Below, in pieces: positions 1 to 55,990 of a stretch of 64,000 bases of DNA. A program made the position numbers and the translations under genes. The stretch lies in the IMG/VR virus record IMGVR_UViG_3300036846_000743, positions 1 through 64,000 of that record. One strand, written 5' to 3'. The stretch's first letter is position 1. Every line of letters starts with the position of its first letter. The notes under the pieces are model-generated. The model searched no databases, had not been told where the DNA came from, and saw nothing but the letters and a program-made list of their open reading frames with translations.

Positions 1-363
1 ATCAGCCGCCAGTGCACATGGCAGACAGTCGTCGTCGAGCGTGATGACGACATCGGCCCCATGCTCGAGCACCGCGGCCAGAAAGCCCCAGGTCTTGATG
101 CCCGAGTCGCAGCGGGCCAACCAGCCCGGCAGATCGTGAGAGTCACACGACCGGCTGATCGTACCCCAGTCGTAGCAGGTCAACCCATCCCAGCTGCCTT
201 CGACCCGCGGATCGTCGGGCGTGAACTGCGGACCGCCGCCATCCTGGACCAAGATCGTGACGTCCCAGGGGAACCCCTTCTTGCCATACCAGGCGTCGAT
301 GAACTCGCGGAACTGTTCCTCGCGGTTAGACGCGACGACCACGCCGACCTTACGCTCTTCCAC
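1..363 (-). CDS. RGP/GT75-like (reversibly glycosylated polypeptide, UDP-sugar mutase-like) glycosyltransferase, 3' end outside window
   Basis: Not in the ORF track because it runs off the edge. Manual translation: GTG at 363 with AGGAG RBS, VEERKVGVVVASNREEQF...RCDSGIKTWGFLAAVLEHGADVVITLDDDCLP. The DS-x-x-x-x-GF...I/V-T-L-DDDC pattern resembles RGP-family proteins. Confidence 0.65.
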   Translation of the reverse strand, partial: MEERKVGVVVASNREEQFREFIDAWYGKKGFPWDVTILVQDGGGPQFTPDDPRVEGSWDGLTCYDWGTISRSCDSHDLPGWLARCDSGIKTWGFLAAVLEHGADVVITLDDDCLPCALAAD

Positions 364-7605: not shown

Positions 7606-9387
7606 TCAACCTTGTTTGATCTTGGGAACCGGGAATAGCAAAGTCGGGGTATCAGGCGGCAGGAATGTCCGCTTGAGCAGCACCCAACACGCCGGGTTGA
7701 ACATGAGCACCTTCACGTGCTCGCGTTCGAGTCGTTTCATGCGGAACACGGGGATATACAGGGGCGGCACCTCGATCCCTTTCTCCTCGGCCTCGAGCCG
7801 CGCGACTGTGTTCTTAACGACCTTGACGTTTTCCGCGCGGCAAAGCCGCTTCATCCATAAGGATGCCTTGCCGTAGTCTGGACAGTGATCGAGGCCGAAC
7901 GACTTATCGGTCAGCTTGGGTGCCCGCTTGAGGGCATCGGCCACGCCGTCCATCTCGACGTATTCCTTGGCCGTGGCGAACATCTGATGGCTCGGCAGGA
8001 TCAGCTGAATCGTCTGCCGGGACAGCTCCAGCTGCTCACGGTTGCTGACGGCAATGTCGGCCAGCCGGGCCACGGCCCCGGTCATGGTCGCAATCAGCTC
8101 GGCCAGCTCGCCGGGAGGAGCGCCATGGGCCTTGACGGCCTTCAGGACGATCGGTTCGAGCGTCGCCGGCAATTCCTCCAGGATGATCGCGCGGAACGCA
8201 GCACGCAGCTCCTCGTCCGTCAGGCCGGTCTTGGCACCAGGCGCTTTGTAATGGCCGTACTTGCGAATCGACGGCAAAACGTCGTGGTACACCCACCGTC
8301 TGAACCCCTCTGCATCCTTCTTGCGACTGGTCGAGATCAGTCTGTACAAGCCCGGTTCTTTGAGCGTGACGTGAGATTGGGGGCCGCCAGGGGTATCTAC
8401 TACGCGGAGCCCCTTTTCATCGGCAGGAACTCGCGACAGAGCCTGATGAGGTTGGGCGATACCGAGCGCATCGGTGACATAAAGCCCTACCCACTCAGGA
8501 TCTTCGTACGTCCCGAAGGTCGGACACGGATACTTGTCCATGAAGATATCCGGGACGCCTACCAGAGGCTGCTCGACCGGCAATTCGGGCTCGGGTGGTG
8601 GTGCTGAAGCCTCGACTGGCTTCTGGCCAGCCGCGATCGGTATGCCGTCGGCCAGCTGAAGCTCGCCGTCGGGGGCCATCATCGCCAGGCGCGGCAACAG
8701 TCGCGGCTCGGCTGGATGCCGACCCGCCCGCCACTCCGCCCGGTCCTGCGCCGTGGACAGCTGCGCGACGTGGAACGTCATCACGCGGGCTGCATCGTCG
8801 ACGGGGATGTCGAGGAGCGTAGGCTTGGCCCAGCTGGACAGCACCTTCGTGACGGCCGCCGTACCCAGGATCAGGACCGGCGTGACGTCACGCTCCAGCC
8901 TGGCGTCTCTCGCCTTGACCGCCGCCAGGAAGGTGGACTCGGGCATCCTTCTGCGCGTGGCGGTCCAGTGATCGATGGCCTCGTCCCAGGCCATGATCAG
9001 CTCGGCGTGATGCGCCGCGAAGGGGATGTATCTGGGCAGAACGTAGCGGATGAGATTGCGGCAGAACTCGATGTAGCCGCCGACGCGCATGTGGAACGCC
9101 TTCTGGATCAGTCCCTCCACAGCGAAAAGTGTTGTGCTCCGCATTCGCGTCTTGGTGTAGATCTTGTGCGGGTCCGGCACGCGCCGCACGTACTTCTCGG
9201 AGATCCCGCCGGCGATGTCGCTGGTGCTGTACTCGCCGGTAGCCCGGCGGCCGAAGCCGCTCAACCTCGCAACCTGCTGGGCCGGGGCCCAGAGAGTATG
9301 GTCCTGGCCGGGTTCGTGGAGAATGTCGACCTCCACGTCGCCATAGAACAAGATCGTCTGCGTCTCGTAGCCTTGGAGCGCTGGCAT
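7606..9387 (-). CDS. BRO-N domain protein (phage antirepressor-like)
   Basis: PEWVGLYVTDALG...EKGLRVVDTPGGPQSHVTLKEPGLYRLISTSRKKDAEGFRRWVYHDVLPSIRKYGHY is a canonical Bro-N motif; GGAGGAGG RBS. Confidence 0.85.
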   Translation of the reverse strand: MPALQGYETQTILFYGDVEVDILHEPGQDHTLWAPAQQVARLSGFGRRATGEYSTSDIAGGISEKYVRRVPDPHKIYTKTRMRSTTLFAVEGLIQKAFHMRVGGYIEFCRNLIRYVLPRYIPFAAHHAELIMAWDEAIDHWTATRRRMPESTFLAAVKARDARLERDVTPVLILGTAAVTKVLSSWAKPTLLDIPVDDAARVMTFHVAQLSTAQDRAEWRAGRHPAEPRLLPRLAMMAPDGELQLADGIPIAAGQKPVEASAPPPEPELPVEQPLVGVPDIFMDKYPCPTFGTYEDPEWVGLYVTDALGIAQPHQALSRVPADEKGLRVVDTPGGPQSHVTLKEPGLYRLISTSRKKDAEGFRRWVYHDVLPSIRKYGHYKAPGAKTGLTDEELRAAFRAIILEELPATLEPIVLKAVKAHGAPPGELAELIATMTGAVARLADIAVSNREQLELSRQTIQLILPSHQMFATAKEYVEMDGVADALKRAPKLTDKSFGLDHCPDYGKASLWMKRLCRAENVKVVKNTVARLEAEEKGIEVPPLYIPVFRMKRLEREHVKVLMFNPACWVLLKRTFLPPDTPTLLFPVPKIKQG

Positions 9388-9428
9388 AAGAAACCTCCTC
9401 CTGGATAGGATCTAGCCCGTTCCACTGA

Positions 9429-9457
9429 TATATGACAGGTTTTTTCCGTGTGGTAAG
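9429..9457 (-). promoter_or_regulatory. Candidate phage promoter, variant copy (CTTAC-N16-GTCATATA)
   Basis: Same -10-like box and spacing as three other copies; 42 nt upstream of the BRO start. Confidence 0.45.
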
Positions 9458-10714: not shown

Positions 10715-11818
10715 TCAGGTTCGTTTATCGCGGAAACAGCCGTAGCGGGCAACAAGCCGCCGGCCTTCGCGGATACTCAAATAGGCGAGAGCATCCTCGA
10801 CCGGCACCCGCGGGTTGATGAGCCCATCGGGATAACGCAGCGCCCTGGCCACGGCAGACACCACCACGCGACGTTTGGGCCTGGGTATGACGACATGGAG
10901 CAAGGGCTTATTGCTCCGTGCCAGCTCGTGCACCTTCTTGGGCACGTTGGCACCGTCGACGGCCAAGATCACCTGATGGACCTGGACCTCCCAGGGATAA
11001 GCATGATCATCGACGCAGCGGAAGTGAATCACTTCGAGCATGCCGCCGCCTGGCCCGGCAGCCTTCAAGAGCGCCTTGGACTCGCTCAGCCGATGAAGCC
11101 GGGCATCGGGCGCGCCACGGACGCGGCTATCCAGGAACGTGCTCAGGCCACAGCGCTGGATCGTGCCGCTGATCAACTGCCCGCTCTTGTCTCCCGTGAT
11201 CCGGACATTCCTCACAGGCTTTGGCACAGATCGCGGCAACCGGAAGGTGAAGATCCGCCGGACCAGGTCGTAAGGACTCTTGCTGCCGACTTCGACGTCC
11301 TTTATACTCCGTATAAAGGACGCCGACTTCTCAGGTTTCGGGCCAGTATCGACCGGCCGGACCCGCCGTTTTACCCCTGGTGGTGACGGAAAGAAGCGCG
11401 AGTCGATCTTCAACCAGTATTGCCTGACGTCGCGCGCCCAGCAGAACGGACAGATCTGCCTGAGCTTGCAAGGTCTACGACCTTCCTTCTTGTCGAAGGT
11501 CATGACAAAAGCCACCGGACAGGACATGGCGTTGGGCAATCGCGACTTCTTGCCAGGCAGGTTGAATGGCTTCCAGCCCGCCTCAGCCAGCTGGACGACC
11601 CTGCGACGCCACAGATGCAGTATCCAGGCCGTGGCATCTGAGATATCAGCGTCGCTCCTGAGCCGGCCGAAGGTGGGCCGCAGAACCGCGGAGAGCTGAA
11701 CCTGGTCTTGGTACCGCAACGGTACCGCCGAGACCCTGTAACCGGGATTGGGCGGCCTCTTGCGAAACCTGGAACCGTCCGATGGAGACGCCTCGACGTC
11801 TAGGAGCTTGTCTGACAT
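10715..11818 (-). CDS. Rep_1-like (pC194/pUB110-type HUH) protein with degenerate motifs
   Basis: In order: MSC-x16-CKLRQICPFCWAR Cys cluster; IFTFR (motif I-like); GMLEV...WEVQVHQVIL (motif II, QVH for HUH); ALRYP (motif III Tyr); RRLVARYGCFR C-terminal box. GGAGG RBS before MSDKLL. Confidence 0.5.
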   Translation of the reverse strand: MSDKLLDVEASPSDGSRFRKRPPNPGYRVSAVPLRYQDQVQLSAVLRPTFGRLRSDADISDATAWILHLWRRRVVQLAEAGWKPFNLPGKKSRLPNAMSCPVAFVMTFDKKEGRRPCKLRQICPFCWARDVRQYWLKIDSRFFPSPPGVKRRVRPVDTGPKPEKSASFIRSIKDVEVGSKSPYDLVRRIFTFRLPRSVPKPVRNVRITGDKSGQLISGTIQRCGLSTFLDSRVRGAPDARLHRLSESKALLKAAGPGGGMLEVIHFRCVDDHAYPWEVQVHQVILAVDGANVPKKVHELARSNKPLLHVVIPRPKRRVVVSAVARALRYPDGLINPRVPVEDALAYLSIREGRRLVARYGCFRDKRT

Positions 11819-12251
11819 GGGACCTCCGTGGGGCCATTTGGGGCAGTTTGCGACAGTTTTCGCCAGATGCATTTGACCACGGAATGAGTGACATACGCTT
11901 GTCGCAATCATTCCAGGCTGCGCAAGTCTTGAAGGGTTCGAGACTTCTGGAGAATTAAACAAGTTGCACCAAGTGTTGCAACTATTGAAGCCTCGGACGC
12001 AAGTACTTGCTGGTATTGGTTTTAGTTAGCCTAAATATGGGAAGAAGACTTGTCAAGTCACTAGCCTATTGTTTTTTGCTAGTGACTACTACGTAGATAA
12101 CTTTTTGTGAGAGGTCGCCGCTTCGCGACCTCCCTCTCACAAAAACGGAAAACTTTTTTGTTCGCTTTTTCGATCCGGTACCCAAGTCCTAGCGCCACCA
12201 TCTCGCGCGCCGATCCGGCGAAGCCCTTGAGTCGCCGTCACGGCACCGAGA

Positions 12252-12290
12252 TGCTACTTCCGAGGTAGCATTGCTACTTCCGAAGTAGCA
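12252..12290. repeat. Tandem pair of 19-bp palindromic units TGCTACTTCCGA(G/A)GTAGCA
   Basis: Two copies at 12252-12270 and 12272-12290, differing at one position. Confidence 0.9.
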
Positions 12291-12968
12291 AACCTGCGGG
12301 ATCTAGCGCTATGTTAAGTCCCACAGGTTTTCGTCCTGAATTCCCGGGAAGGGGGAAATTCTTTCATCCGGCTTTCCCTATAGGGCCCTGTTTTTGGTTT
12401 TTTGAGACCCTACTCTCTTGTTTAGTGTTCACAGTGAACGCTCGCGTTCACTGACGTGAACGTTCACGTTCATACCAGCCAGCTAACTGTTCGAGGAACA
12501 GTGCGCACATGCCTAAGAGGATCCCCAACTGCTGATCGAGGCTGGTCTTTCATTTGCACCCGTCAGTCTTCCACTTCAGGGCTCGAGCTTTTCACAAAGA
12601 CCGGTTTTTCCCTCGAACTTTTTCATTTCGAAGTCAAAGTCTTTCGTGCGGCTTTCCCAGGAGGTCTGTTATCTAGCTCTAATGTTTAGATCCCCAGCCA
12701 GCCAGCGCTGGTTGGCCGCCAACCAGCGACAACCAGCGACAGCCAGAGCTGGCAGGCCCCTGAAGCGCGCAATCCATTGCCGCGCCAACAGCTTGGCGCG
12801 GCTCCAGTTGCGCCGCCAGCATTGGCGTCTGGCTTCGCTGATCACTTGGAGTAGTGAATGTTGGTTTTTCACTACCTTGACTTTCCGAAAGGGACTTTCC
12901 GTTCAGCAAAGTTCCGCTGGTTCATGAACCGGCGATGAACCAGCGAACCAAGAAACTTCGCTGAACTC

Positions 12969-13011
12969 GAGGGTTGGTTTTCCAACCCTGGGAGGGTTGG
13001 TTTTCCAACCC
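12969..13011. repeat. Tandem pair of 20-bp hairpin units GAGGGTTGGTTTTCCAACCC
   Basis: Identical copies at 12969-12988 and 12992-13011; each folds as GGGTTGG-TTTT-CCAACCC. Confidence 0.9.
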
Positions 13012-13174
13012 ATCTGGCGCAAGTCCGATGCAGATCCTATTTTCGCTCCGATGAAGATCCGATGATCGAGCGGTTGCTAGCCTTAATATTTAGGCACTAC
13101 TAGGCATGTGCGCACCGAAGCGTCCCGATGCGACTGGAGACGTCGCCAGCCGCTCAAATGTAACCAGAATGTGG

Positions 13175-19108: not shown

Positions 19109-19460
19109 ACACGCCCAGACAGTCGTCGAGATACTGCGCCAGGATGAAGTCGGGCGTGTTCGACCCGTTCTCCTTGCTGTGCCGGTTGATCAGGCTTTCC
19201 AGCTCCTTGCGGAAGCTATCTGTGCTCTCGCCTCCCATGTACGTTCCTCCCATGCTCTCGATGAGCAGACATATCGTGGCAGAGATTGATGGTTTGTGGT
19301 TGCCGTTGAGCAGCGCGGAGCTGACTGCCGCGAACCAGCCGGTCTTGGCCGCTTCGCCGATCTTACCAGCCTGATCCAGGAACCTGCTGGCCATGTCGAG
19401 CTGGGCCATGATCCCTGTCTGCACGGCGACGAGCCCCCTGATGATCTCACGGGTGGTCAT
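18951..19460 (-). CDS. Hypothetical phage protein
   Basis: Contains FRKELESLINRHSKENGSNTPDFILAQYL, a motif I recall from small uncharacterised phage proteins. Confidence 0.55.
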   Translation of the reverse strand: MTTREIIRGLVAVQTGIMAQLDMASRFLDQAGKIGEAAKTGWFAAVSSALLNGNHKPSISATICLLIESMGGTYMGGESTDSFRKELESLINRHSKENGSNTPDFILAQYLDDCLGVFDKTVRHREQWYGRNPQNFEPGPAPADPPSGEPPAQPIKSVLGAEHTGDPYD

Positions 19461-19987
19461 TCTGGCTCCTGTAAAGAGTCCTGGAGTTCCGCGGCTCCCG
19501 CTTCGTTTTCATCGGCGTAGAGAAATTCCATGGCGTCATCCTTAACCTCGATATCAAACGGACCGGGATGAGTCAGCCGATCGTACAGGTTTTCGGCCAG
19601 ATCGTCCGTAGGGTAGCTCCGATCGCGGAGATTGTCGACATAGTCGGGCCCCCGTCGCAGCAGCTGCTCAGTGACGTCAAACCGGACCGGCTGCCCGTCA
19701 GCTATCACAGCGTCGTTCTTCCATCGCTGAGGAATGAACAAGGCCGTGATAGCGAACCGTGCCTCGACCAGCCGGATCAGGCAGCCCATGGCCACTTCCC
19801 TCATGCTCTCGGGCAGGCGCCAGATCTCTTTCCAGACCTTGCACAGATCTCCCCTGGTCGTAGCGGGATCGGCCAGATGATCCCAGTTGAACAGAACGAC
19901 CTTGACCTCGCTGACCTCATCGTCTTGATCGACTTCGTAGTTGGTCACGCCTTCCTGGGTATGGATCAGCACAGTCGGTGTTTTCAT
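19457..19987 (-). CDS. Hypothetical protein
   Basis: GGGAG RBS; 4-bp overlap tiling. Confidence 0.55.
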   Translation of the reverse strand: MKTPTVLIHTQEGVTNYEVDQDDEVSEVKVVLFNWDHLADPATTRGDLCKVWKEIWRLPESMREVAMGCLIRLVEARFAITALFIPQRWKNDAVIADGQPVRFDVTEQLLRRGPDYVDNLRDRSYPTDDLAENLYDRLTHPGPFDIEVKDDAMEFLYADENEAGAAELQDSLQEPE

Positions 19988-20149
19988 GTCATCTCCCTAC
20001 GCGGTTCAAGTAAGTTGCGATGCAGTACCAGTACCAGGCCCCTTGCTCTTCTGCGCGGGGCAGGCACCACCAGCAAAACCAGAAGCCGCAGATCTGCTGC
20101 TCGAGGTTATCGCGGCGTTCGCAGTAGTAGCATTCGTCGGTTCTCATGG

Positions 20150-21019
20150 TCATGGCTCGAAATACTTGGCCAGTTTGTGCAGGTCACGGGCAAGCCGATA
20201 GAAGCCGTAACGCTCGAAGTCACGGGCCCGCTGGCCACTACGACCGAGCACCTCACCAATCTGGTGAAAGGTCATCGGCGGATCGTCGCCCAGACCGTAG
20301 CGCAGCACAAGAGTCGCCGCCCACAGCGGCTTGAGATATTCCAGCGTGTTGTACAGCTTGTTCCCCAGCCACCTGCGCTCGGCGTAGTCCTCGACGGGAG
20401 GAAGATCGGCGACCAGGTTATCGAGCGCGTCCTGGTTCTCATCAGGATCACGCGCGCGTACCTGGAACGCCCGGCGCCCATGTTCCAGGATCTTGATCTG
20501 CCGTTTCTTGAGCCTGAGCGCCGCCGCCACTGTCGTCCAGTGCGGGATATCGCCGAGCGTGATCATGAGCAGCTGCTCAGCTTTATCCCACCTTTTCAGG
20601 GCTTTGCGAACGGCATCAGGCACGGAGACCAGCTGATCATCGAGATGGATGGCCTTGATGACCCGGTTCACGATGTGATAGCGAGCGTAGGTGATAAAGC
20701 GGGCATTGCCGCCGACTATATAGTCAGGTATGGCTTCGAGAAGGCCGAGGTTACCAGCCTGGATCAGGTCCATGACGCGAACCCGGGAATGTCTGCCTTC
20801 CTCACGGCAGCCGCGCGTGTAAGCCCGGTGGAACCAACCGGCGCACCAGATGACATAGCGGAGATGCCGATGAATCAACTCCTGTCTTGCCTCTTCGCAT
20901 CCTTGCTTGGTCCGTATGATCAGTTCCAGTTCTTGGGCAGGTGTCGGCGGATCTAGCCCCAGTTCTCTGATCTGGCGTAGGTAGGTGGAGCGGCCGCGAC
21001 CCGGTATGCGGGCCTTCAT
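20150..21019 (-). CDS. Phage-encoded sigma70-family RNA polymerase sigma factor (regions 1.2, 2, 3, 4; no region 1.1)
   Basis: TYLRQI (1.2), ARQELIHRHLRYV (2.1), DLIQAGNLGLLEAI (2.2), RFITYA (2.3), VLVL-like TLVLRYGL...MTFHQIGEVLG (4). Confidence 0.9.
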   Translation of the reverse strand: MKARIPGRGRSTYLRQIRELGLDPPTPAQELELIIRTKQGCEEARQELIHRHLRYVIWCAGWFHRAYTRGCREEGRHSRVRVMDLIQAGNLGLLEAIPDYIVGGNARFITYARYHIVNRVIKAIHLDDQLVSVPDAVRKALKRWDKAEQLLMITLGDIPHWTTVAAALRLKKRQIKILEHGRRAFQVRARDPDENQDALDNLVADLPPVEDYAERRWLGNKLYNTLEYLKPLWAATLVLRYGLGDDPPMTFHQIGEVLGRSGQRARDFERYGFYRLARDLHKLAKYFEP

Positions 21020-21055: not shown

Positions 21056-23908
21056 CTAACCGCACGGCCCTGGATTGCCGCAGTTGTCGCAACGATAGCA
21101 GCGGGCCCCGTTGGGGACCATGACCGTGCCGCAGATGCGGCATGGCGGTCCCGTGAGCCGGGCCGTGGCCAGCCGTGAAGCCGTCATGGTAGCAACGCCA
21201 TTGCTTATGCTGTTGCCAGCGACGATAGTCGTCGATACAGGCTTCACATCGAAGTGATCTTCCGAGTGCCGCACGGGCACATTCTGCTCACGGTAGCCGG
21301 GGATGAACCGCATGCCCATCCATCTGAAGATGTAGTCAACGACACTCCGGGCAATAGGGATGTCCGGGTTCTTGGTGAATCCTGATGGATCGAACCGGGT
21401 GTACGTGAATTTGTCGACGTAGACACCGATGGGCACGCCGTATTGGAGGCCCATCGAGATCAGGGTGCCGATGGTGTCCATCAGCCCGCCGACGGTTGAT
21501 CCCTCCTTGGCCATCGTGATGAATAGCTCGCCAGGAGTGCCGTCGTCGTAGAGGCCGACGATCAGGTAGCCTTCGCAGTTACCGTCGATCGTAAACTTAT
21601 GGGTTACCGACCCGCGGGTATCTGGTAACCGGCGTCGGTAGGGCGCCGTCTGGATGGCCGCGGCCACCGTCGCCGCCATTGTTTCGATCTCCTGCTTCAT
21701 GACCACCGGCTGGCTCCCCTTGGAGCCATCCCGGAATATGGCCAGAGCTTTCAGGCCCAGCTTCCAGCCCAGCAGGTAGGCATCCCTGATCTGGTCGACC
21801 GTCGCGTCGGCCGGCAGGTTACAGGTCTTTGAGATCGCCCCCGAGACGAATGGCTGGGCCGCCCCCATCATCTTGACGTGGCCCGCGAACGGTATCGATC
21901 GCTCACCACTGGCCGGCACGAAAGCACAGTCGAAGACCGGCAGATCATGAGTCTTCATGTAAGGCGCGCCCTCGATCGTGCCGGTCTCCTCCATGTGGGC
22001 CAGGATCGCGGTGATGTGCTCAGGCTTGTAGCGCAGAGCTTCGAGCGCAATCGGCACCGTGTGATTGACGATCTTGAGCTGTCCGCCGCCGGCCAGGTTC
22101 TTGTACTTCACCAGGCCGATCTCGGGCTCGATGCCGGTGGTATCAGCTCCCATCATGAAAGCGATCGTGCCGGTGGGCGCGATCACCGAGATCTGACTGT
22201 TGCGATAGCCATGGGCCTGGCCGGCGCTGATGACCTCGTTCCATACCTTCCAGGCAATATCCGTCAGCTCATGATCGACCGACCCGGGATCGATCGCGAG
22301 CAGCGCACTACGATGCAGCTCCATGACCTTGAGCATCGGCTCACGGTTCTCGGCAAAGCCCTCGAACGGCCCTGCGACGCTGGCCAGCTCGGCTGAAGTC
22401 AGGTATCCCTGACCAGTCAGGATAGCTGTCAGGGCAGCGCAGGTAGCACGGCCCTCGGGGCTGTCGTAGGGCTTGCCCATGGCCATGATCAGGGCGCCCA
22501 GGTTGCAGTAGCCCAGGCCCAGCGGCCGGAAGCGATGACTGTTCTCGGCGATCTTGGGCGTCGGATAGCTGCCGTGATCGACCAGGATCTCCTGGGCCGT
22601 GATCATGATCCGGCAGGCTGCGCGGTAACGGTTCACATCGAATGAACCGTCTTCTCGCCGGAACTTCATCAAGTTGAGCGAGGCCAGATTGCAGGACGTA
22701 TCGTCCAGGAACATGAACTCACTGCACGGATTCGATGCGTTAATAGGACCGGTGTTGGGACACGTATGCCACTGCTGGATCGTGTCTTCGTACTGGAGCC
22801 CGGGGTCGCCGCAGGCCCAGGTACCCGTAGCGATCTTGTCCATGAGATCGACCGCGCTATAGACCGGCATCTCGCCGACGGGCGTGCCGGGCACGACCGG
22901 TACTGTCTGCCACTGAGCCCCATTATCAGCGGCCCGGAGGAATTCGCCGGTAGCCCGGACGCTCATGTTGCAGTTCTGGTAACGAACCGAAGCATAAGCC
23001 TCGCCATTGAAGTCGGGATCGTAGCCGGCGGCAATCAGGGCCTGGGCCTTGCGTTCTTCTTTGGCCTTGGCCTCGATGAACTCCAGGATATCTGGATGAG
23101 TGCACTTGAGTGACTGCATCTTGGCCGCGCGCCGGGTCTTGCCGCCGCTCTTGACCGTCGAGGCCACGCCGTCGTAGATCTGCATGAAGGACACTGGACC
23201 TGACGCCATGCCACCGCCTGAAACTTTCTCGCGGCTCGACCGGAGCGTCGACAGGTCGGTACCCGTGCCTGAGCCATACTTGAAGAGCATGGCCTCAGAG
23301 GTCGCCAGAGTCATGATGCCTTCCATGTCGTCGGTGACCGACTGGATGAAGCAGGCCGAGCCCTGGGGGTGCTTGTAGGCGTCCCCGGGCTGGACCTTGA
23401 CCGTGCTCTCCGTCTTCCGGTCCCAGTGCCACGACCGGCTGGTGCCCTGGATGCCGTACTGGTGATACAGCCCCACGTTGAACCAGACAGGCGAGTTGAA
23501 GGCCGCATACTGCTGGAGCAGCAGCACCACCAGTTCGTCGAAGAAGATGTCGGCGCTGGCCTGGTCGCAGAAGATCCCGTAGCTGATGCCCTGCTGGGTG
23601 ATCGTGCGCGCCACCCGGTGCACCAGCTGGCGGACGCTGCTCTCGCGCTCGGGCCGGCCATCTTCCAGCTGTCTTTGCGAATCACCGTAGAAGTACTTGG
23701 ATACCACCACGTTGGTGGAAACATCAGTGTAGCTGGCCGGAACTTCGGCATCGTCCTGCCGGAATATCTCCTGGCCCTTGTCATCGCGGATGACAGCCAT
23801 CCGTTTGGTCCAGCGAACCGACTCGAATGGATCTTGGCCCTCTTTGCTGAAGATGCGCTCGAAACCCAGCCCCGCACTGGGGGCTGCCGTGACCGCTACG
23901 GTATTCAT
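21056..23908 (-). CDS. nrdJ: Class II (adenosylcobalamin-dependent) ribonucleotide reductase with C-terminal TSCPD and zinc-ribbon domains
   Basis: FNSPVWFN, SACFI, NASNPCSEFMFLDDTSCNLASLNL, IAPTGTI, GAISKTCN, RRRLPDTRGSVTHKF, CRICG...CDNCG; AAGGA RBS before MNTV. Confidence 0.95.
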   Translation of the reverse strand: MNTVAVTAAPSAGLGFERIFSKEGQDPFESVRWTKRMAVIRDDKGQEIFRQDDAEVPASYTDVSTNVVVSKYFYGDSQRQLEDGRPERESSVRQLVHRVARTITQQGISYGIFCDQASADIFFDELVVLLLQQYAAFNSPVWFNVGLYHQYGIQGTSRSWHWDRKTESTVKVQPGDAYKHPQGSACFIQSVTDDMEGIMTLATSEAMLFKYGSGTGTDLSTLRSSREKVSGGGMASGPVSFMQIYDGVASTVKSGGKTRRAAKMQSLKCTHPDILEFIEAKAKEERKAQALIAAGYDPDFNGEAYASVRYQNCNMSVRATGEFLRAADNGAQWQTVPVVPGTPVGEMPVYSAVDLMDKIATGTWACGDPGLQYEDTIQQWHTCPNTGPINASNPCSEFMFLDDTSCNLASLNLMKFRREDGSFDVNRYRAACRIMITAQEILVDHGSYPTPKIAENSHRFRPLGLGYCNLGALIMAMGKPYDSPEGRATCAALTAILTGQGYLTSAELASVAGPFEGFAENREPMLKVMELHRSALLAIDPGSVDHELTDIAWKVWNEVISAGQAHGYRNSQISVIAPTGTIAFMMGADTTGIEPEIGLVKYKNLAGGGQLKIVNHTVPIALEALRYKPEHITAILAHMEETGTIEGAPYMKTHDLPVFDCAFVPASGERSIPFAGHVKMMGAAQPFVSGAISKTCNLPADATVDQIRDAYLLGWKLGLKALAIFRDGSKGSQPVVMKQEIETMAATVAAAIQTAPYRRRLPDTRGSVTHKFTIDGNCEGYLIVGLYDDGTPGELFITMAKEGSTVGGLMDTIGTLISMGLQYGVPIGVYVDKFTYTRFDPSGFTKNPDIPIARSVVDYIFRWMGMRFIPGYREQNVPVRHSEDHFDVKPVSTTIVAGNSISNGVATMTASRLATARLTGPPCRICGTVMVPNGARCYRCDNCGNPGPCG

Positions 23909-24222
23909 GTCTGGTTCCTTGGGATCAGCAGGGAATACGGAGTCTCCTCGGGGCCGGCCTCGCGGTGAGGCGGCTGATGAAGTGCATCGCTCAGGCGGCT
24001 CTTGCCAGTCCCGAAGGACCGTTGGCATGCGAGGGCCGCCTGATCATATCGCACCTCCGTGTAAAGCCCGGTGCTCCATCAGTGAACAACAGTCGGCGTG
24101 GCCCGCTGGGTGTCATGCCCTGCCGCCGACCGTCTACCGGGGGTTTATCCTACACGGCGCAGGCCACCTGGCCAACCCAGGCCCTGTCGCGATCTAGCAG
24201 TTATGCCGCAACTGTAGGTATA

Positions 24223-24906
24223 TTACGTGTTTGCGTTGATATTATAGATCTCGGCGTCGAGAACACGCGCGCCATTGCCCTTGGGTTTCAGCCGGACCGC
24301 AGCAATCGCGTCGCGCGCGACGCCCGCTACCTCGTCGGCGAGCTTGTTGAGTCCGACCGTGCAGCGCGCGATCCAGTGAAAGTGGAAGATGTAGCCAGCT
24401 CGTTCGAGTTGAAGCAGAACGTTCCAGAGCGGCCGCTTCTTGCGGAGCTTGATCGCGGGCTGACCGCCCTGGGCCAAGAGGTTCCAGTGCTTGACAGTCG
24501 TATCATTATCCGTGAGCACGTGCACGTTGAGTATAGGTCGACCCGTCCGGATCGTAGCCGTGTGCCTGTGGAACTCGTCATACCACAGGATCGCGTGCAC
24601 GGCCGGCATCAGCTCGGCGATGGTGATCGAGCCCGTCGACATGCCGCCGTAGAAAGCACGTCTGCGGGCCAGATGCCGGTCAATCAGCGTGCAGCCCCAG
24701 CCGCACGGCTTGTCCCACCAGCAGCCAGCACCGTCGCCAATGATCAGGATGTCCCATGTATCGGGAATGCCGGCTTCCGTGATGATCTTATCGAGGCTCT
24801 TCTGAGCATACTCCGGTACCAGCGGAGCTGATGTCCTGTTTTGTTTCAACCCCTGGCGGAGATGGTACCCGTTGCGGTTGTGCTGCTTCTGCCTCTGCTT
24901 TGGCAT
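24223..24906 (-). CDS. RNase HI-like nuclease
   Basis: IIGDGAG (D), TIAELMP (E), VLTDN (D), FHWI...NKLADEVA (N..AD): the RNase H catalytic constellation. Confidence 0.8.
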   Translation of the reverse strand: MPKQRQKQHNRNGYHLRQGLKQNRTSAPLVPEYAQKSLDKIITEAGIPDTWDILIIGDGAGCWWDKPCGWGCTLIDRHLARRRAFYGGMSTGSITIAELMPAVHAILWYDEFHRHTATIRTGRPILNVHVLTDNDTTVKHWNLLAQGGQPAIKLRKKRPLWNVLLQLERAGYIFHFHWIARCTVGLNKLADEVAGVARDAIAAVRLKPKGNGARVLDAEIYNINANT

Positions 24907-52282: not shown

Positions 52283-52311
52283 TATATGACAGGAATCTGG
52301 GCGAAATTTAG
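52283..52311 (-). promoter_or_regulatory. Candidate phage promoter CTAAA-N16-GTCATATA
   Basis: Minus strand GCTAAATTTCGCCCAGATTCCTGTCATATA, intergenic, upstream of 52207. Confidence 0.6.
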
Positions 52312-52393: not shown

Positions 52394-53092
52394 TTACGCC
52401 TTGCGGACGGACCTGCGGAAGTACCGTCTGTAGGCGAGCACACCAGTGAGCCCGATGCCCATCAGGGACATCGAGGCAGGCTCAGGCACGGCCTGCTGCG
52501 AGAAACTACCGTTAGCGACGATCGTCGAACCTGGCGTCGCGAACAACCCGGCAAAGCTATTGATCCCCCCACCGAAGGTAGTTCCGGTAAAGGTGAAGTT
52601 GATATCGCCGCCCTTGGCAAACAGCGAGTAGTCAAACCGTGGGTTGTCGTTCTCGATCAGACTGACGATCTTGCCGCTCATATTGAAAAAGTTGGGCAAA
52701 ACGGTCGGGGCAACACCAGTCGTGGCGGTGAACGTCAGCATCGCTTCAGCGCCCGGCACGTCGCCAACGGTCTTGGTATAGGTTGATGGCGACAGCGCCA
52801 ACGAGTAGGTCTCCGAGCCAGTAGGCGTCACCAACAAGGTGATCGGCCCGTTGACCGAGATCGGCTCAGGTGTCAGCAGTGACACGCCGTTGACCGTGTT
52901 CACCTGACTGAACAGATTGGGTATCCGCGCGATCTCGATCGTCGCGGTACCTCCCGAGATCCCCATGTTCGTCAGCTCGACACCGCCGATCGAACCGGAG
53001 TCGCTGAACACCACGGTACCGGCTTGCGCCGATCCCAGGCCGGCGATCGCAGCGACCAAAGCCATGGCAAAACAGAGAGAACGCATCTTCAT
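52394..53092 (-). CDS. PEP-CTERM (exosortase-targeted) cell-surface protein
   Basis: Signal peptide MKMRSLCFAMALVAAIAGLGSAQA; Thr/Ser/Gly-rich body; C-terminal VPEPASMSLMGIGLTGVLAY-RRYFRRSVRKA. Confidence 0.9.
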   Translation of the reverse strand: MKMRSLCFAMALVAAIAGLGSAQAGTVVFSDSGSIGGVELTNMGISGGTATIEIARIPNLFSQVNTVNGVSLLTPEPISVNGPITLLVTPTGSETYSLALSPSTYTKTVGDVPGAEAMLTFTATTGVAPTVLPNFFNMSGKIVSLIENDNPRFDYSLFAKGGDINFTFTGTTFGGGINSFAGLFATPGSTIVANGSFSQQAVPEPASMSLMGIGLTGVLAYRRYFRRSVRKA

Positions 53093-53180
53093 ACTTCCGA
53101 TACTCCATACTAGAGACACGAACAGCGCTGTTCCGTACTCCACGCACGGAACCTGAAGCCCGGGCTATAGGGCTCCATAG

Positions 53181-53209
53181 TATATGACAGGCAGACGGCC
53201 GAAGTTTAG
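53181..53209 (-). promoter_or_regulatory. Candidate phage promoter CTAAA-N16-GTCATATA
   Basis: Minus strand GCTAAACTTCGGCCGTCTGCCTGTCATATA, upstream of the PEP-CTERM gene. Confidence 0.6.
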
Positions 53210-55352: not shown

Positions 55353-55895
55353 TCACTTCAGCGGCAGCTTCGAGCCCCTGAGCATCTCCGACACGAAGCG
55401 CAGCGAGTTCTGCCGGAACTTCTCCTGGGCTTCCTCGCCGCGAATGTCGGCGCGATCCATCAACGCCACGAGGCGACGCTGGGAATCCCGCTTGACCTCG
55501 ACGCTGGGCCAGCGATCGAGCGTGTCCGCGCTGTAGATTGCCGTGAGCACGGTCATCAGCTGCAACTTGTCGACGTCCGGCTTGGCTTCCAGCGCGGCAA
55601 GCTGCCGCAAGGCCACGTCGACCACGCTCGGCTTGGGCTTGGGCGTCGACCGGTACTGCGTGCGATCCATCAGCACCCCGAGCCGCTCCATGCAGGTCAT
55701 GCCAACATCCTTGTCGGGCCAATGGTTGCCGTGGTGCACGGTGAGGCCCAGCCCGGCAACCACGTCCAGGTCGAGCATGAACGTGGCGTCGAGGGGCCGC
55801 TGCTGTGCCCGTCGCTCCAGGTCTTCAAGGCCATCCATCAGCAGCTTGAACAGATCCGGTTCAGGACCGGCTGTCGCCAGCGAATCCGGTGACAT
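55353..55895 (-). CDS. Hypothetical protein
   Basis: Helical ~180 aa ORF; AAAGG RBS. Confidence 0.6.
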   Translation of the reverse strand: MSPDSLATAGPEPDLFKLLMDGLEDLERRAQQRPLDATFMLDLDVVAGLGLTVHHGNHWPDKDVGMTCMERLGVLMDRTQYRSTPKPKPSVVDVALRQLAALEAKPDVDKLQLMTVLTAIYSADTLDRWPSVEVKRDSQRRLVALMDRADIRGEEAQEKFRQNSLRFVSEMLRGSKLPLK

Positions 55896-55961
55896 TGGTG
55901 ATCTACCTTTCGTAGAAAAAGTTGGGTAGGACCACTCCACAACTAGGAAGTGGCCTTACTG

Positions 55962-55990
55962 TTTATGACATTTTTCCGGCTGATCTTTAG
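55962..55990 (-). promoter_or_regulatory. Candidate phage promoter CTAAA-N16-GTCATAAA
   Basis: Minus strand CTAAAGATCAGCCGGAAAAATGTCATAAA, just after the collagen gene stop. Confidence 0.55.

What the first reader, a model, noticed from the sequence alone, without database searches (positions are those of the whole stretch)
20150..21019. Sigma factor with rewired promoter-recognition residues
Seen: region 2.3-2.4 reads TYARYHIVNRV against RpoD-type TYATWWIRQAI, so the WW dyad, Arg and Gln are replaced. Region 4.2 reads GRSGQRARDFE against TRERIRQIE. Known: these positions contact the -10 and -35 elements and drive melting. Inference: non-canonical specificity, consistent with the CTAAA/GTCATATA motif.
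Basis: partly seen in the sequence, partly recalled or inferred. Interest (0 to 1): 0.6.

Follow-up and report, generated by a model that had tools for sequence, protein, structure and literature searches.

The report
Accessory sigma factor in RNAP-encoding phage

Summary
ORF 20150-21019(-) encodes a 289-aa sigma-70-family protein spanning regions 1.2 to 4.2. A gapless alignment to SigA confirms the replaced -10 and -35 contact residues. These replacements are rare even among its 65 nearest relatives.

The link to the CTAAA/GTCATATA motif does not hold. The motif is a genuine promoter-like class (3 hits in the window against 0.02 expected). It is just as frequent in relatives G001 and G002, where no copy of this sigma was found. 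In G001 one copy sits exactly where the sigma gene lies here.

The window is part of a complete 226-kb phage that encodes:
- a multisubunit RNA polymerase (beta fused to the beta' N-terminal part, plus a separate beta' C-terminal part);
- a second, more divergent sigma, found in every near-complete relative. Its homologue in Salmonella phage Arash (gp10) is packaged in virions.

The sigma under study is an accessory gene. It always lies just downstream of the class II ribonucleotide reductase gene nrdJ. It evolves much faster than its neighbours (33-37% identity against 73-77% for the reductase).

Best reading: an accessory alternative sigma with non-canonical promoter specificity. Neither its polymerase partner (host or phage) nor its target promoters could be determined. 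I rate it a new variant of a known kind, of moderate interest.

The parts
20150..21019 (-). Accessory sigma-70-family gene (P0001, 289 aa)
   Evidence: Pfam Sigma70_r2 scores 25.8 bits (cut-off 24). TIGR02937 scores 45.4 (cut-off 42.9). phrog_351 'RNA polymerase sigma factor' gives E 2e-16. The AF2 model has pLDDT 87, and the top Foldseek hits are SigA and RpoS chains at probability 1.0.
20900..20986 (-). Region 1.2 (aa 12-40)
   Evidence: Aligned to SigA region 1.2 in the phmmer alignment. Helices H9-20 and H27-38 in the model.
20732..20770 (-). Region 2.2 core-binding motif DLIQAGNLGLLEA (aa 84-96)
   Evidence: Near-canonical. D84, G89, G92, L93 and A96 are conserved in 90% or more of relatives. 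E407 is replaced by A, which is rare (4 of 65).
20648..20698 (-). Region 2.3-2.4 with replaced -10 contact and melting residues (FITYARYHIVNRVIKAI, aa 108-124)
   Evidence: Gapless alignment to FSTYATWWIRQAITRAI. Residue frequencies among 65 relatives are.
20450..20617 (-). Region 3.0-3.1 (aa 135-190); the extended -10 contacts H455 and E458 are replaced by A and K
20396..20449 (-). Region 3.2 acidic linker or 'sigma finger' (aa 191-208), predicted disordered
   Evidence: pLDDT below 50 at aa 192-207. Aligned to SigA region 3.2.
20159..20395 (-). Region 4 (aa 209-287). The recognition helix GRSGQRARDFE lies at nt 20213-20245.
   Evidence: Pfam Sigma70_r4 scores 22.9 bits, just under its 24.1 cut-off. 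Alignments, frequencies.
21056..24028 (-). Class II (B12-dependent) ribonucleotide reductase gene nrdJ, ending 36 nt upstream of the sigma start; probably co-transcribed with it
   Evidence: Pfam Ribonuc_red_lgC E 7e-128, plus Ribonuc_red_2_N and TSCPD. No promoter-like or terminator-like site lies between the two genes. The same nrdJ-to-sigma order is seen on the P0016 and P0017 contigs.
19989..20153 (-). 54-aa Cys-rich ORF (CxxC...C...CxxC) whose ATG overlaps the sigma stop codon (ATGA)
   Evidence: No Pfam match. Absent at this place in L016. Function unknown.
19457..19987 (-). Conserved downstream gene (176 aa, unknown function) that marks the right edge of the sigma locus
   Evidence: 45% identical to the gene downstream of sigma in L016. 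48% identical to the gene that directly follows nrdJ in G001.
53183..53209 (-). Promoter-like bipartite motif CTAAA-N15-TGTCATA, ending about 40 nt upstream of the predicted start of gene 52394-53143; not dependent on this sigma
52285..52311 (-). Second copy of the same motif
55964..55990 (-). Third copy of the motif (TGTCATAAAC variant), about 20 nt upstream of gene 55353-55940
9428..9457 (-). Variant copy (CTTAC-N15-TGTCATATAT), about 40 nt upstream of the Ant/KilAC-domain gene 7606-9387

Best explanation
P0001 is an intact, folded sigma-70-family protein (regions 1.2, 2, 3 and 4, with no region 1.1). It is carried as an accessory gene by one sub-lineage of large phages.

Shown:
- It lies 36 nt downstream of nrdJ with no promoter-like or terminator-like site between them. 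It is therefore probably expressed with nucleotide-metabolism genes, typically an early or middle class.
- The scaffold and the core-binding region 2.2 are conserved.
- The positions that read the -10 and -35 elements in primary sigmas are replaced, and they vary among its few relatives.
- The gene is absent from the syntenic site of a close relative and was not detected in three near-complete, more distant relatives.

Inferred:
- It binds an RNA polymerase core in the canonical way.
- It directs that core to a small, still unidentified set of promoters unlike TTGACA/TATAAT.

The CTAAA-N15-TGTCATA promoter class is not its target. That class is shared with relatives in which this sigma was not found. 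A shared factor is a better candidate, most plausibly the lineage's core sigma working with the phage polymerase.

On balance I favour the host core polymerase as P0001's partner:
- its region 2.2 is bacterial-like;
- its nearest relatives are bacterial RpoD/SigA-family proteins;
- the gene is dispensable in the lineage.
The phage's own polymerase would then use the conserved second sigma. The choice of partner is the weakest step.
For: Family and fold.

Replaced contact residues and their rarity.

Variation within the subfamily: positions 433/434 read YH, YH, WH, HY across the four members. Positions 436/437 read VN, AK, MN, RR. Positions 584-589 read GQRARD, WERVRQ, RERIRS, GERVRT.

Fixed locus and fast evolution:
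- nrdJ is 73-77% identical between genomes, the downstream gene 45-48%, and the sigma only 33-37%.
- The P0017 contig shows the same terminase, nrdJ, sigma order.

Accessory status:
- G001 has no room for the gene between nrdJ and the next gene.
- A general sigma profile finds only the second sigma in G001, G008 and G023.

Motif independence.

The phage has its own polymerase and a lineage-core sigma.

The Arash homologue of the second sigma is in virions together with beta and beta' (PMC10585845).

Bacterial-like nearest relatives: TIGR02997 scores 83.6 bits and Tautonia rosea RpoD/SigA is among the top hits.
Against: - No binding or transcription data exist.
- Target promoters could not be found.
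- Several basic and aromatic residues used by primary sigmas to hold the opened -10 strand are lost (K414E, K418D, R423G, Y425A, R436V, R451S). Promoter opening could therefore be weak or absent.
- All four members of the subfamily sit in the RNAP-encoding phage lineage. Arash independently carries a second canonical-type sigma, gp196. That is equally what a sigma for the phage polymerase would look like.
- G001 and G002 are incomplete contigs (68% and 50%), so a copy elsewhere in those genomes cannot be fully excluded.
Confidence: 0.45

Rival explanations
1. P0001 is a second sigma for the phage's own multisubunit RNA polymerase. The virion-type second sigma would start early transcription. 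P0001, made with nrdJ, would then switch the same viral polymerase to another promoter class, giving a sigma cascade that runs entirely on a viral enzyme.
For: - The phage encodes beta, beta' and a conserved sigma.
- Every known member of the P0001 subfamily whose context could be read lies in this phage lineage.
- Arash, a distant cultured relative, also has two sigmas: gp10 in virions and gp196 absent from its virion table.
- The strong CTAAA/GTCATA sites on the coding strand all lie outside the structural and RNAP half of the genome (56-178 kb). That half therefore needs another promoter class.
Against: - G001, G008 and G023 show only the second sigma, yet have homologous late regions. P0001 cannot be the lineage's essential late sigma.
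- The lineage-core sigma has lost the canonical region 2.2 signature that P0001 keeps. This suggests the viral beta' interface differs from the bacterial one.
- No recurrent second promoter motif was found.
Confidence: 0.3
2. One reading: P0001 recognises the CTAAA / GTCATATA bipartite motif.
For: - The motif is real, has sigma-type two-block geometry, and sits 20-50 nt upstream of gene starts.
- P0001's contact residues are non-canonical.
Against: - The motif is equally frequent in G001 (6 copies) and G002 (7 copies), where no homologue of P0001 was found.
- In G001 a copy occupies the very spacer where P0001 lies in this genome.
Confidence: 0.07
3. P0001 no longer works as a promoter-specificity factor. 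It is either a core-binding competitor that pulls host polymerase away from host sigmas, or a gene drifting towards loss, as has already happened in G001.
For: - It has lost many residues that primary sigmas use to bind and open the -10 element, while keeping region 2.2.
- DNA-contact positions vary within the subfamily.
- The gene is absent from close relatives.
- Identity to its relatives is low compared with its neighbours.
Against: - The ORF is intact in four phages at the same locus.
- 42 columns are invariant across the subfamily.
- The AF2 model is confident in all domains including region 4. This argues for selection on the whole protein, not only its core-binding part.
Confidence: 0.12

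Closest known systems
Bacterial group 1 to group 3 sigma-70-family factors (RpoD/SigA, RpoS, SigB); nearest named relative is a Tautonia rosea (Planctomycetota) RpoD/SigA-family protein, WP_169977193.1
   Same: Same domain order (1.2, 2, 3, 4), same fold, and a near-canonical region 2.2. Full-length alignments to SigA and RpoS structures.
   Different: About 30% identity. It scores far below every equivalog or subfamily cut-off (83.6 against 384.5 bits for the best). The -10 and -35 contact residues are replaced. It has no region 1.1 and carries a 9-residue insertion between regions 1.2 and 2.1.
Phage-encoded sigma-70-like factors thought to redirect host RNA polymerase (SPO1 gp28 and gp33/34 and T4 gp55 from my own knowledge; cyanophage S-CBS1 rpsD4 and Microcystis phage MaAM05 rpoD; 'group 2' jumbo phages in PMC7824862)
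   Same: A phage gene of the sigma-70 family with diverged promoter-contact residues.
   Different: According to the reviews, those phages lack an RNA polymerase of their own. This phage has beta and beta' genes plus another sigma. Identity to phage sigmas is at most 28%.
Salmonella phage Arash (OQ632216): gp206 and gp216 (beta/beta') and gp10 (sigma found in virions), plus gp196 (second sigma, annotated RpoS)
   Same: - The polymerase layout matches: beta fused to the beta' N-terminal part, plus a separate beta' C-terminal part. The fusion protein is 33% identical.
- gp10 is the homologue of this phage's second sigma.
- Arash also carries two sigma genes.
   Different: - P0001 and gp196 share only 35% identity over 83 aa and are not syntenic.
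- gp196 keeps the WW dyad.
- P0001 shows no BLASTP similarity to gp10.
phiKZ gp68 and AR9 gp226, the promoter-specificity subunits of jumbo-phage multisubunit polymerases
   Same: They are viral specificity factors for viral multisubunit polymerases. That is the role proposed in the rival explanation, and for the second sigma.
   Different: According to the reviews they have no recognisable sequence similarity to sigma. P0001 and the second sigma are plain sigma-70-family members by sequence.
Sigma-28 (FliA) class promoters, TAAA-N15-GCCGATAA (from memory; a lead only)
   Same: The motif here has a similar layout: TAAA, 15 nt, then an 8-mer. Arash gp10's best NCBIfam match is FliA/WhiG.
   Different: The downstream block (TGTCATATA) differs from GCCGATAA. 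No experiment links any sigma to the motif.

Membership tests
Sigma-70 family (Pfam Sigma70_r2 and r4; NCBIfam TIGR02937) | Region 2 domain | tested here: met
   PF04542 scores 25.8 bits against a 24 cut-off. TIGR02937 scores 45.4 against 42.9.
Sigma-70 family (Pfam Sigma70_r2 and r4; NCBIfam TIGR02937) | Region 4 helix-turn-helix domain | tested here: inconclusive
   PF04545 scores 22.9 bits, just under its 24.1 cut-off. Region 4 nevertheless aligns over its full length to SigA chains and is modelled at pLDDT above 90.
Sigma-70 family (Pfam Sigma70_r2 and r4; NCBIfam TIGR02937) | Overall sigma fold (sigma2, sigma3, sigma4 helical domains) | tested here: met
   AF2 pLDDT 87. The top Foldseek hits are SigA and RpoS chains at probability 1.0 over about 280 columns.
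Sigma-70 family (Pfam Sigma70_r2 and r4; NCBIfam TIGR02937) | Binds RNA polymerase core and confers promoter-specific initiation | not testable with these tools
   The one complex prediction gave no verdict. Biochemistry is needed.
Primary (group 1) sigma, RpoD/SigA | Score above the RpoD equivalog or subfamily cut-offs; region 1.1 present | tested here: not met
   Best scores are TIGR02997 at 83.6 against 384.5 and TIGR02393 at 65.7 against 354. The protein starts at region 1.2.
Primary (group 1) sigma, RpoD/SigA | Canonical -10 and -35 contact residues (W433, W434, R436, Q437, R584, E585, Q589) | tested here: not met
   All are replaced.
Group 3 sigma-28 (FliA/WhiG) | Score above the family cut-off | tested here: not met
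   TIGR02479 scores 37 against 189.6.
Group 4 (ECF) sigma | Two-domain architecture without region 1.2 or region 3 | tested here: not met
   Regions 1.2 and 3.0-3.2 are present and aligned to SigA.
Lineage-core virion-type sigma (Arash gp10 family) | Sequence similarity to gp10 and its homologues; presence in all relatives | tested here: not met
   No BLASTP similarity to gp10. The gp10 homologue is a different gene, at genome coordinates 70212-71003(-).

The most novel reading that the evidence does not exclude
This phage lineage carries a self-contained, sigma-dependent transcription system. It consists of a beta-beta' polymerase plus a conserved sigma whose Arash homologue is packaged in virions. 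P0001, and independently gp196 in Arash, would be a second sigma that re-targets the viral polymerase. That would be a sigma switch running on a viral multisubunit RNA polymerase, with specificity residues that diversify quickly between related phages. It would break the reviewed rule that RNAP-encoding jumbo phages lack sigma homologues and that sigma-encoding ones lack polymerases.
Probability: 0.3. Interest if true: 0.8.

Novelty: new variant of a known kind. Interest (0 to 1): 0.55.

Why it matters
Two recent reviews (PMC13282480, PMC7824862) describe jumbo-phage transcription as a choice between two strategies. A phage either brings its own sigma-less multisubunit polymerase or brings sigma factors that capture the host enzyme.

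This genome and its relatives, including the cultured Salmonella phage Arash, combine a bacterial-type beta/beta' polymerase with sequence-recognisable sigma-70-family proteins. Some members carry two sigmas.

The gene under study is the variable one. It sits at a fixed locus, can be lost, and evolves fast at its DNA-reading positions. That makes it a natural system for asking two questions:
- how sigma specificity and promoters co-evolve;
- whether a canonical sigma can serve a viral polymerase.

Because Arash can be grown in the laboratory, the question is testable now.

Tried and rejected
- Complex prediction: P0001 aa 1-185 against the phage beta' N-terminal part (P0159 aa 240-612). Score 0.00, verdict 'no answer'. 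This is not evidence either way.
- The search for related loci with P0001 alone in IMG/VR: no relative. With the subfamily alignment: only sigmas of 32% identity or less.
- Word-index protein search: only distant RpoD-like hits at 28%.
- The P0010 contig is too short to give context.
- Search for P0001's own promoters: k-mer enrichment in intergenic DNA, exact bipartite 5+5-mer enumeration and blastn footprinting against G001 and G002. None gave a second recurrent promoter class. Many of my 'gaps' turned out to be genes my caller had missed.
- Canonical TTGACA/TATAAT scan around nrdJ and sigma: 0 sites.
- A weak motif-like site upstream of nrdJ (about 24218-24247) scores within shuffle noise.
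- Motif in more distant relatives: 0-3 exact hits, so it is confined to the close clade.
- Rfam: 0 hits. tRNA scan: 0 hits in the window.
No expression or environment data were obtained and read laying was not used.
- The G003 237-aa protein with a sigma region 4 is specific to G003, not a P0001 counterpart.
- I considered a co-variation argument: sigma E407A paired with a changed beta' clamp-helix residue. I dropped it because the contact pairing rests on memory and the Arash alignment was uninformative.

Full report
**1. The observation**

ORF 20150-21019 on the minus strand is intact and encodes 289 aa. A codon-usage model trained on this genome scores it as coding.

Family assignments:
- Pfam Sigma70_r2 scores above its gathering cut-off (25.8 against 24).
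- Pfam Sigma70_r4 scores just below its cut-off (22.9 against 24.1).
- The NCBIfam superfamily model TIGR02937 scores above its cut-off (45.4 against 42.9). Full-length but far sub-threshold alignments are found to RpoD, SigA, RpoS and SigB models.
- PHROG 351, 'RNA polymerase sigma factor', matches at E 2e-16.

phmmer against all PDB chains finds only sigma factors. It aligns residues 13-276 to SigA from region 1.2 to region 4.2. FITYARYHIVNRVIKAI pairs with FSTYATWWIRQAITRAI, and GRSGQRARDFE with GVTRERIRQIE, both without gaps.

An AlphaFold2 model built on 66 relatives is confident (pLDDT 87) and all-helical. The only disordered stretch is the acidic region 3.2 linker. Its Foldseek hits are SigA and RpoS chains at probability 1.0.

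**2. Is the substitution pattern unusual?**

I aligned P0001 with its 65 best relatives from an exhaustive HMMER search of 1.8 billion cluster representatives. I then counted residues at the classical contact positions. The E. coli numbering is from my own knowledge.

| Position | Usual residue (of 65) | P0001 residue (of 65) |
|---|---|---|
| 434 | W in 59 | H in 3 |
| 436 | R or K in 56 | V in 0 |
| 437 | Q in 53 | N in 1 |
| 451 | R in 59 | S in 1 |
| 584 | R or K in 54 | G in 3 |
| 585 | E in 60 | Q in 2 |
| 589 | Q in 53 | D in 0 |

Y at position 433 is ordinary (22 of 65). Region 2.2, the main core-binding element, remains near-canonical (DLIQAGNLGLLEA).

The 'rewired' description is therefore correct and is not just generic divergence. 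Replaced WW and Q residues are nevertheless normal for alternative sigmas as a class (established knowledge).

**3. What the window is**

The window is the first 64 kb of a 226,073-bp IMG/VR virus record, rated 100% complete. A 129-bp terminal overlap indicates a circular assembly. The genome is 61% G+C, and almost every gene lies on the minus strand.

The gene directly upstream of the sigma is a class II ribonucleotide reductase, nrdJ (21056-24028). A gpA-type large terminase lies nearby.

Only 36 nt with a ribosome-binding site separate the nrdJ stop from the sigma start. No sigma70-type promoter and no minus-strand terminator-like site lies between them. Co-transcription of the two genes is therefore likely.

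**4. The phage has its own RNA polymerase**

Searches of the whole genome with Pfam RNAP models found a single set of beta and beta' genes, outside the window:

| Genome coordinates | Product |
|---|---|
| 121859-125458(-) | N-terminal two-thirds of beta |
| 119827-121815(-) | C-terminal part of beta fused to the N-terminal part of beta', including the ADFDGD catalytic motif |
| 116389-118392(-) | C-terminal part of beta' |

No T7-type polymerase was detected. That search rang nowhere, not even in the control genomes, so it says nothing.

The fusion protein has 23 relatives among IMG/VR contigs, at 85% identity down to 40%. Among cultured phages it has distant relatives:
- Salmonella phage Arash (33% identity);
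- Vibrio phages D181, D148 and D69;
- a group of Rhizobium phages.

**5. A second sigma**

The Arash paper reports that purified virions contain the beta protein gp206, the beta' protein gp216 and a sigma factor, gp10 (PMC10585845). P0001 shows no BLASTP similarity to gp10.

The present genome does encode a gp10 homologue, at 70212-71003(-), inside the structural module. A profile of this protein and nine orthologues hits SigA structures at E 2e-12 from late region 2.2 to region 4.2. It is therefore a true, strongly diverged sigma-70-family member.

It was found in 13 of 23 related contigs. These include all those estimated at least 88% complete; the misses are contigs estimated 14-37% complete.

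This second sigma is thus the lineage's core sigma. By analogy with Arash it may be packaged with the polymerase. That last step is an inference.

**6. P0001 is an accessory, fast-evolving gene at a fixed locus**

Only three proteins in the exhaustive search share P0001's signature: P0010, P0016 and P0017. The signature is EA(I/V)PxY, then YA(R/K)(Y/W/H)(H/Y), plus an insertion between regions 1.2 and 2.1. They are 33-37% identical to P0001.

Context of the three:
- P0017 lies directly downstream of a class II reductase on a 38.5-kb contig that also carries the terminase.
- The P0016 contig reads: nrdJ C-terminus (73% identical to ours), then the sigma 40 nt later with the same MKA start, then a 45%-identical homologue of gene 19457-19987.
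- The P0010 contig is too short to read.

In contrast, contig G001 is collinear with genome positions 13.9-151 kb and has a 77%-identical nrdJ. Only about 130 nt separate its nrdJ from the homologue of 19457-19987. tblastn and profile searches find no P0001-like gene in G001 or G002. A general sigma profile finds two sigmas here and in Arash, but only the core one in G001, G008 and G023.

So the gene is old enough at this locus to have diverged to 33-37% identity while its neighbours stayed at 45-77%, and it can be lost.

Within the subfamily the DNA-contact positions differ from member to member, while 42 scaffold columns are invariant.

**7. The motif**

CTAAA-N14-17-GTCATA occurs three times in the window against 0.02 expected. 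It occurs four times in the genome against zero for the reversed control.

A two-block weight matrix finds eight strong sites:
- on the minus (coding) strand: 9438, 52292, 53190, 55971, 178565, 197517 and 205712;
- on the plus strand: 119576.

Those I checked against the gene calls end 20-50 nt upstream of predicted gene starts. Two of the downstream genes encode an Ant/KilAC-domain protein and a MazG-like protein. All seven coding-strand sites lie outside the structural and RNAP half of the genome (56-178 kb).

With blocks GCTAAA and GTCATA the spacer is 16-17 nt, which is sigma-type geometry. The layout TAAA, 15 nt, 8-mer recalls sigma-28 promoters. That comparison is from memory and is only a lead.

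The decisive point is that the same motif occurs six times in G001 and seven times in G002, mostly co-oriented with genes. One G001 copy lies in the nrdJ-downstream spacer, exactly where P0001 sits here.

The motif therefore does not depend on P0001. A factor shared by all three genomes is the better candidate, either the core sigma with the phage polymerase or a host sigma.

**8. Mechanism**

Shown:
- sigma fold;
- conserved core-binding element;
- replaced and variable promoter-contact residues;
- close coupling to nrdJ;
- accessory distribution;
- independence of the motif.

Inferred:
- it binds a polymerase core;
- it confers a non-canonical specificity on a small regulon.

Which core it uses is open.

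In favour of the host core:
- P0001 looks bacterial. Its best models are RpoD/SigA, and a Tautonia rosea protein is among the nearest named relatives.
- It keeps the canonical region 2.2 that the lineage-core sigma has lost.
- It is dispensable in relatives whose late regions are homologous.

In favour of the phage polymerase:
- Every readable member of the subfamily is in this RNAP-encoding lineage.
- Arash independently carries a second canonical-type sigma, gp196, which is absent from its virion table.

A third possibility is a core-binding competitor or a decaying gene. This is suggested by the loss of several basic and aromatic residues that hold the opened -10 strand.

I could not identify P0001's promoters. 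The single complex prediction returned no verdict.

**9. Comparison with what is known**

Reviews state that RNAP-encoding jumbo phages lack sigma homologues, and that sigma-encoding ones lack polymerases and use the host enzyme (PMC13282480, PMC7824862). This lineage does both.

The raw fact is already visible in the Arash annotation and virion proteome. I found no paper that analyses it.

P0001 itself is a member of the sigma-70 family. It is not a member of group 1, FliA, ECF or the gp10 family (see the membership table).

**10. Verdict**

- Observation: confirmed.
- Interpretation: partly supported. It is a sigma with altered specificity determinants, but the motif link fails.
- Novelty: new variant of a known kind.
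- Interest: moderate. It is raised by the context (own polymerase, two sigmas, rapid diversification at a fixed locus) and by the availability of a cultured relative for tests.

Noticed in passing
genome G000:C1 116389-125458 (outside the window; loci L005, L006, L012-L015): The phage encodes a bacterial-type multisubunit RNA polymerase. It consists of a beta N-terminal part, a fusion of the beta C-terminal part with the beta' N-terminal part (ADFDGD motif intact), and a separate beta' C-terminal part. The same layout is seen in Salmonella phage Arash gp206 and gp216.
   Followed up: yes
genome G000:C1 70212-71003(-) (locus L123:1417-2208): A second, strongly diverged sigma-70-family gene lies in the structural module. 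It is the homologue of the Arash virion protein gp10 and is present in all near-complete relatives.
   Followed up: yes
genome G000:C1 about 121815-122900(-) (locus L006/L012): The beta gene carries an intein-like insert of about 340 aa with a LAGLIDADG domain. It sits inside the conserved GDKM|SGRYGDKG motif and is absent from G001. Five codons after the insert, a 7-nt interruption with a TGA stop shifts the frame, so beta is read as two ORFs. It is unclear whether this is a real split, recoding or an assembly error.
   Followed up: partly
window 19989-20153(-): A 54-aa Cys-rich ORF (CxxC...C...CxxC) has a start codon that overlaps the sigma stop codon (ATGA). It has no Pfam match and is absent at this spot in the P0016 contig. 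It could be a zinc-ribbon partner or regulator of the sigma.
   Followed up: partly
window 11963-13174: A 1.2-kb stretch without a credible ORF is packed with short hairpins, several with TTCG loops or GGTTGG...CCAACC stems. It holds four to five copies of a unit like CTAAAyA...GCTAGAT. It also holds a canonical-looking TTGACA-N17-TAGGCT site (12056-12028, minus strand) upstream of gene 10715-11962. It may be an origin, a promoter cluster or a small-RNA region. There is no Rfam match.
   Followed up: partly
G001:C1 32651-35157 (loci L138): The relative G001 has a 2.5-kb insert between the homologues of genes 118402-118656 and 116389-118392. The insert carries three tandem, co-oriented copies of the CTAAA-N15-TGTCATA motif. 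The present genome has no such insert.
   Followed up: no
genome G000:C1 119557-119585(+): The only strong copy of the motif on the non-coding strand lies just downstream of the beta/beta' fusion gene and points back into it. It could drive an antisense transcript.
   Followed up: no
Salmonella phage Arash OQ632216 120656-121693 (locus L151:4657-5694): Arash has a second, canonical-type sigma, gp196 (annotated RpoS, WW dyad kept). It is not listed in the published virion proteome and is not discussed in the paper.
   Followed up: partly
genome G000:C1 144022-144339 and G001:C1 6905-7127: Three non-coding blocks of 31-77 nt are 92-97% identical between the two phages, far above the identity of the flanking genes. 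They may be a structured RNA or a regulatory region.
   Followed up: no
window 21056-21150(-): The class II ribonucleotide reductase ends in a CxxC...CxxC...C zinc-ribbon-like tail that is conserved in G001 and L016. The homologue on the P0017 contig carries an intein.
   Followed up: no
window 1-129 and genome 225945-226073: A 129-bp exact terminal overlap indicates a circularly closed assembly, although the record is labelled linear. Nearly all of the roughly 227 predicted genes are on one strand.
   Followed up: partly
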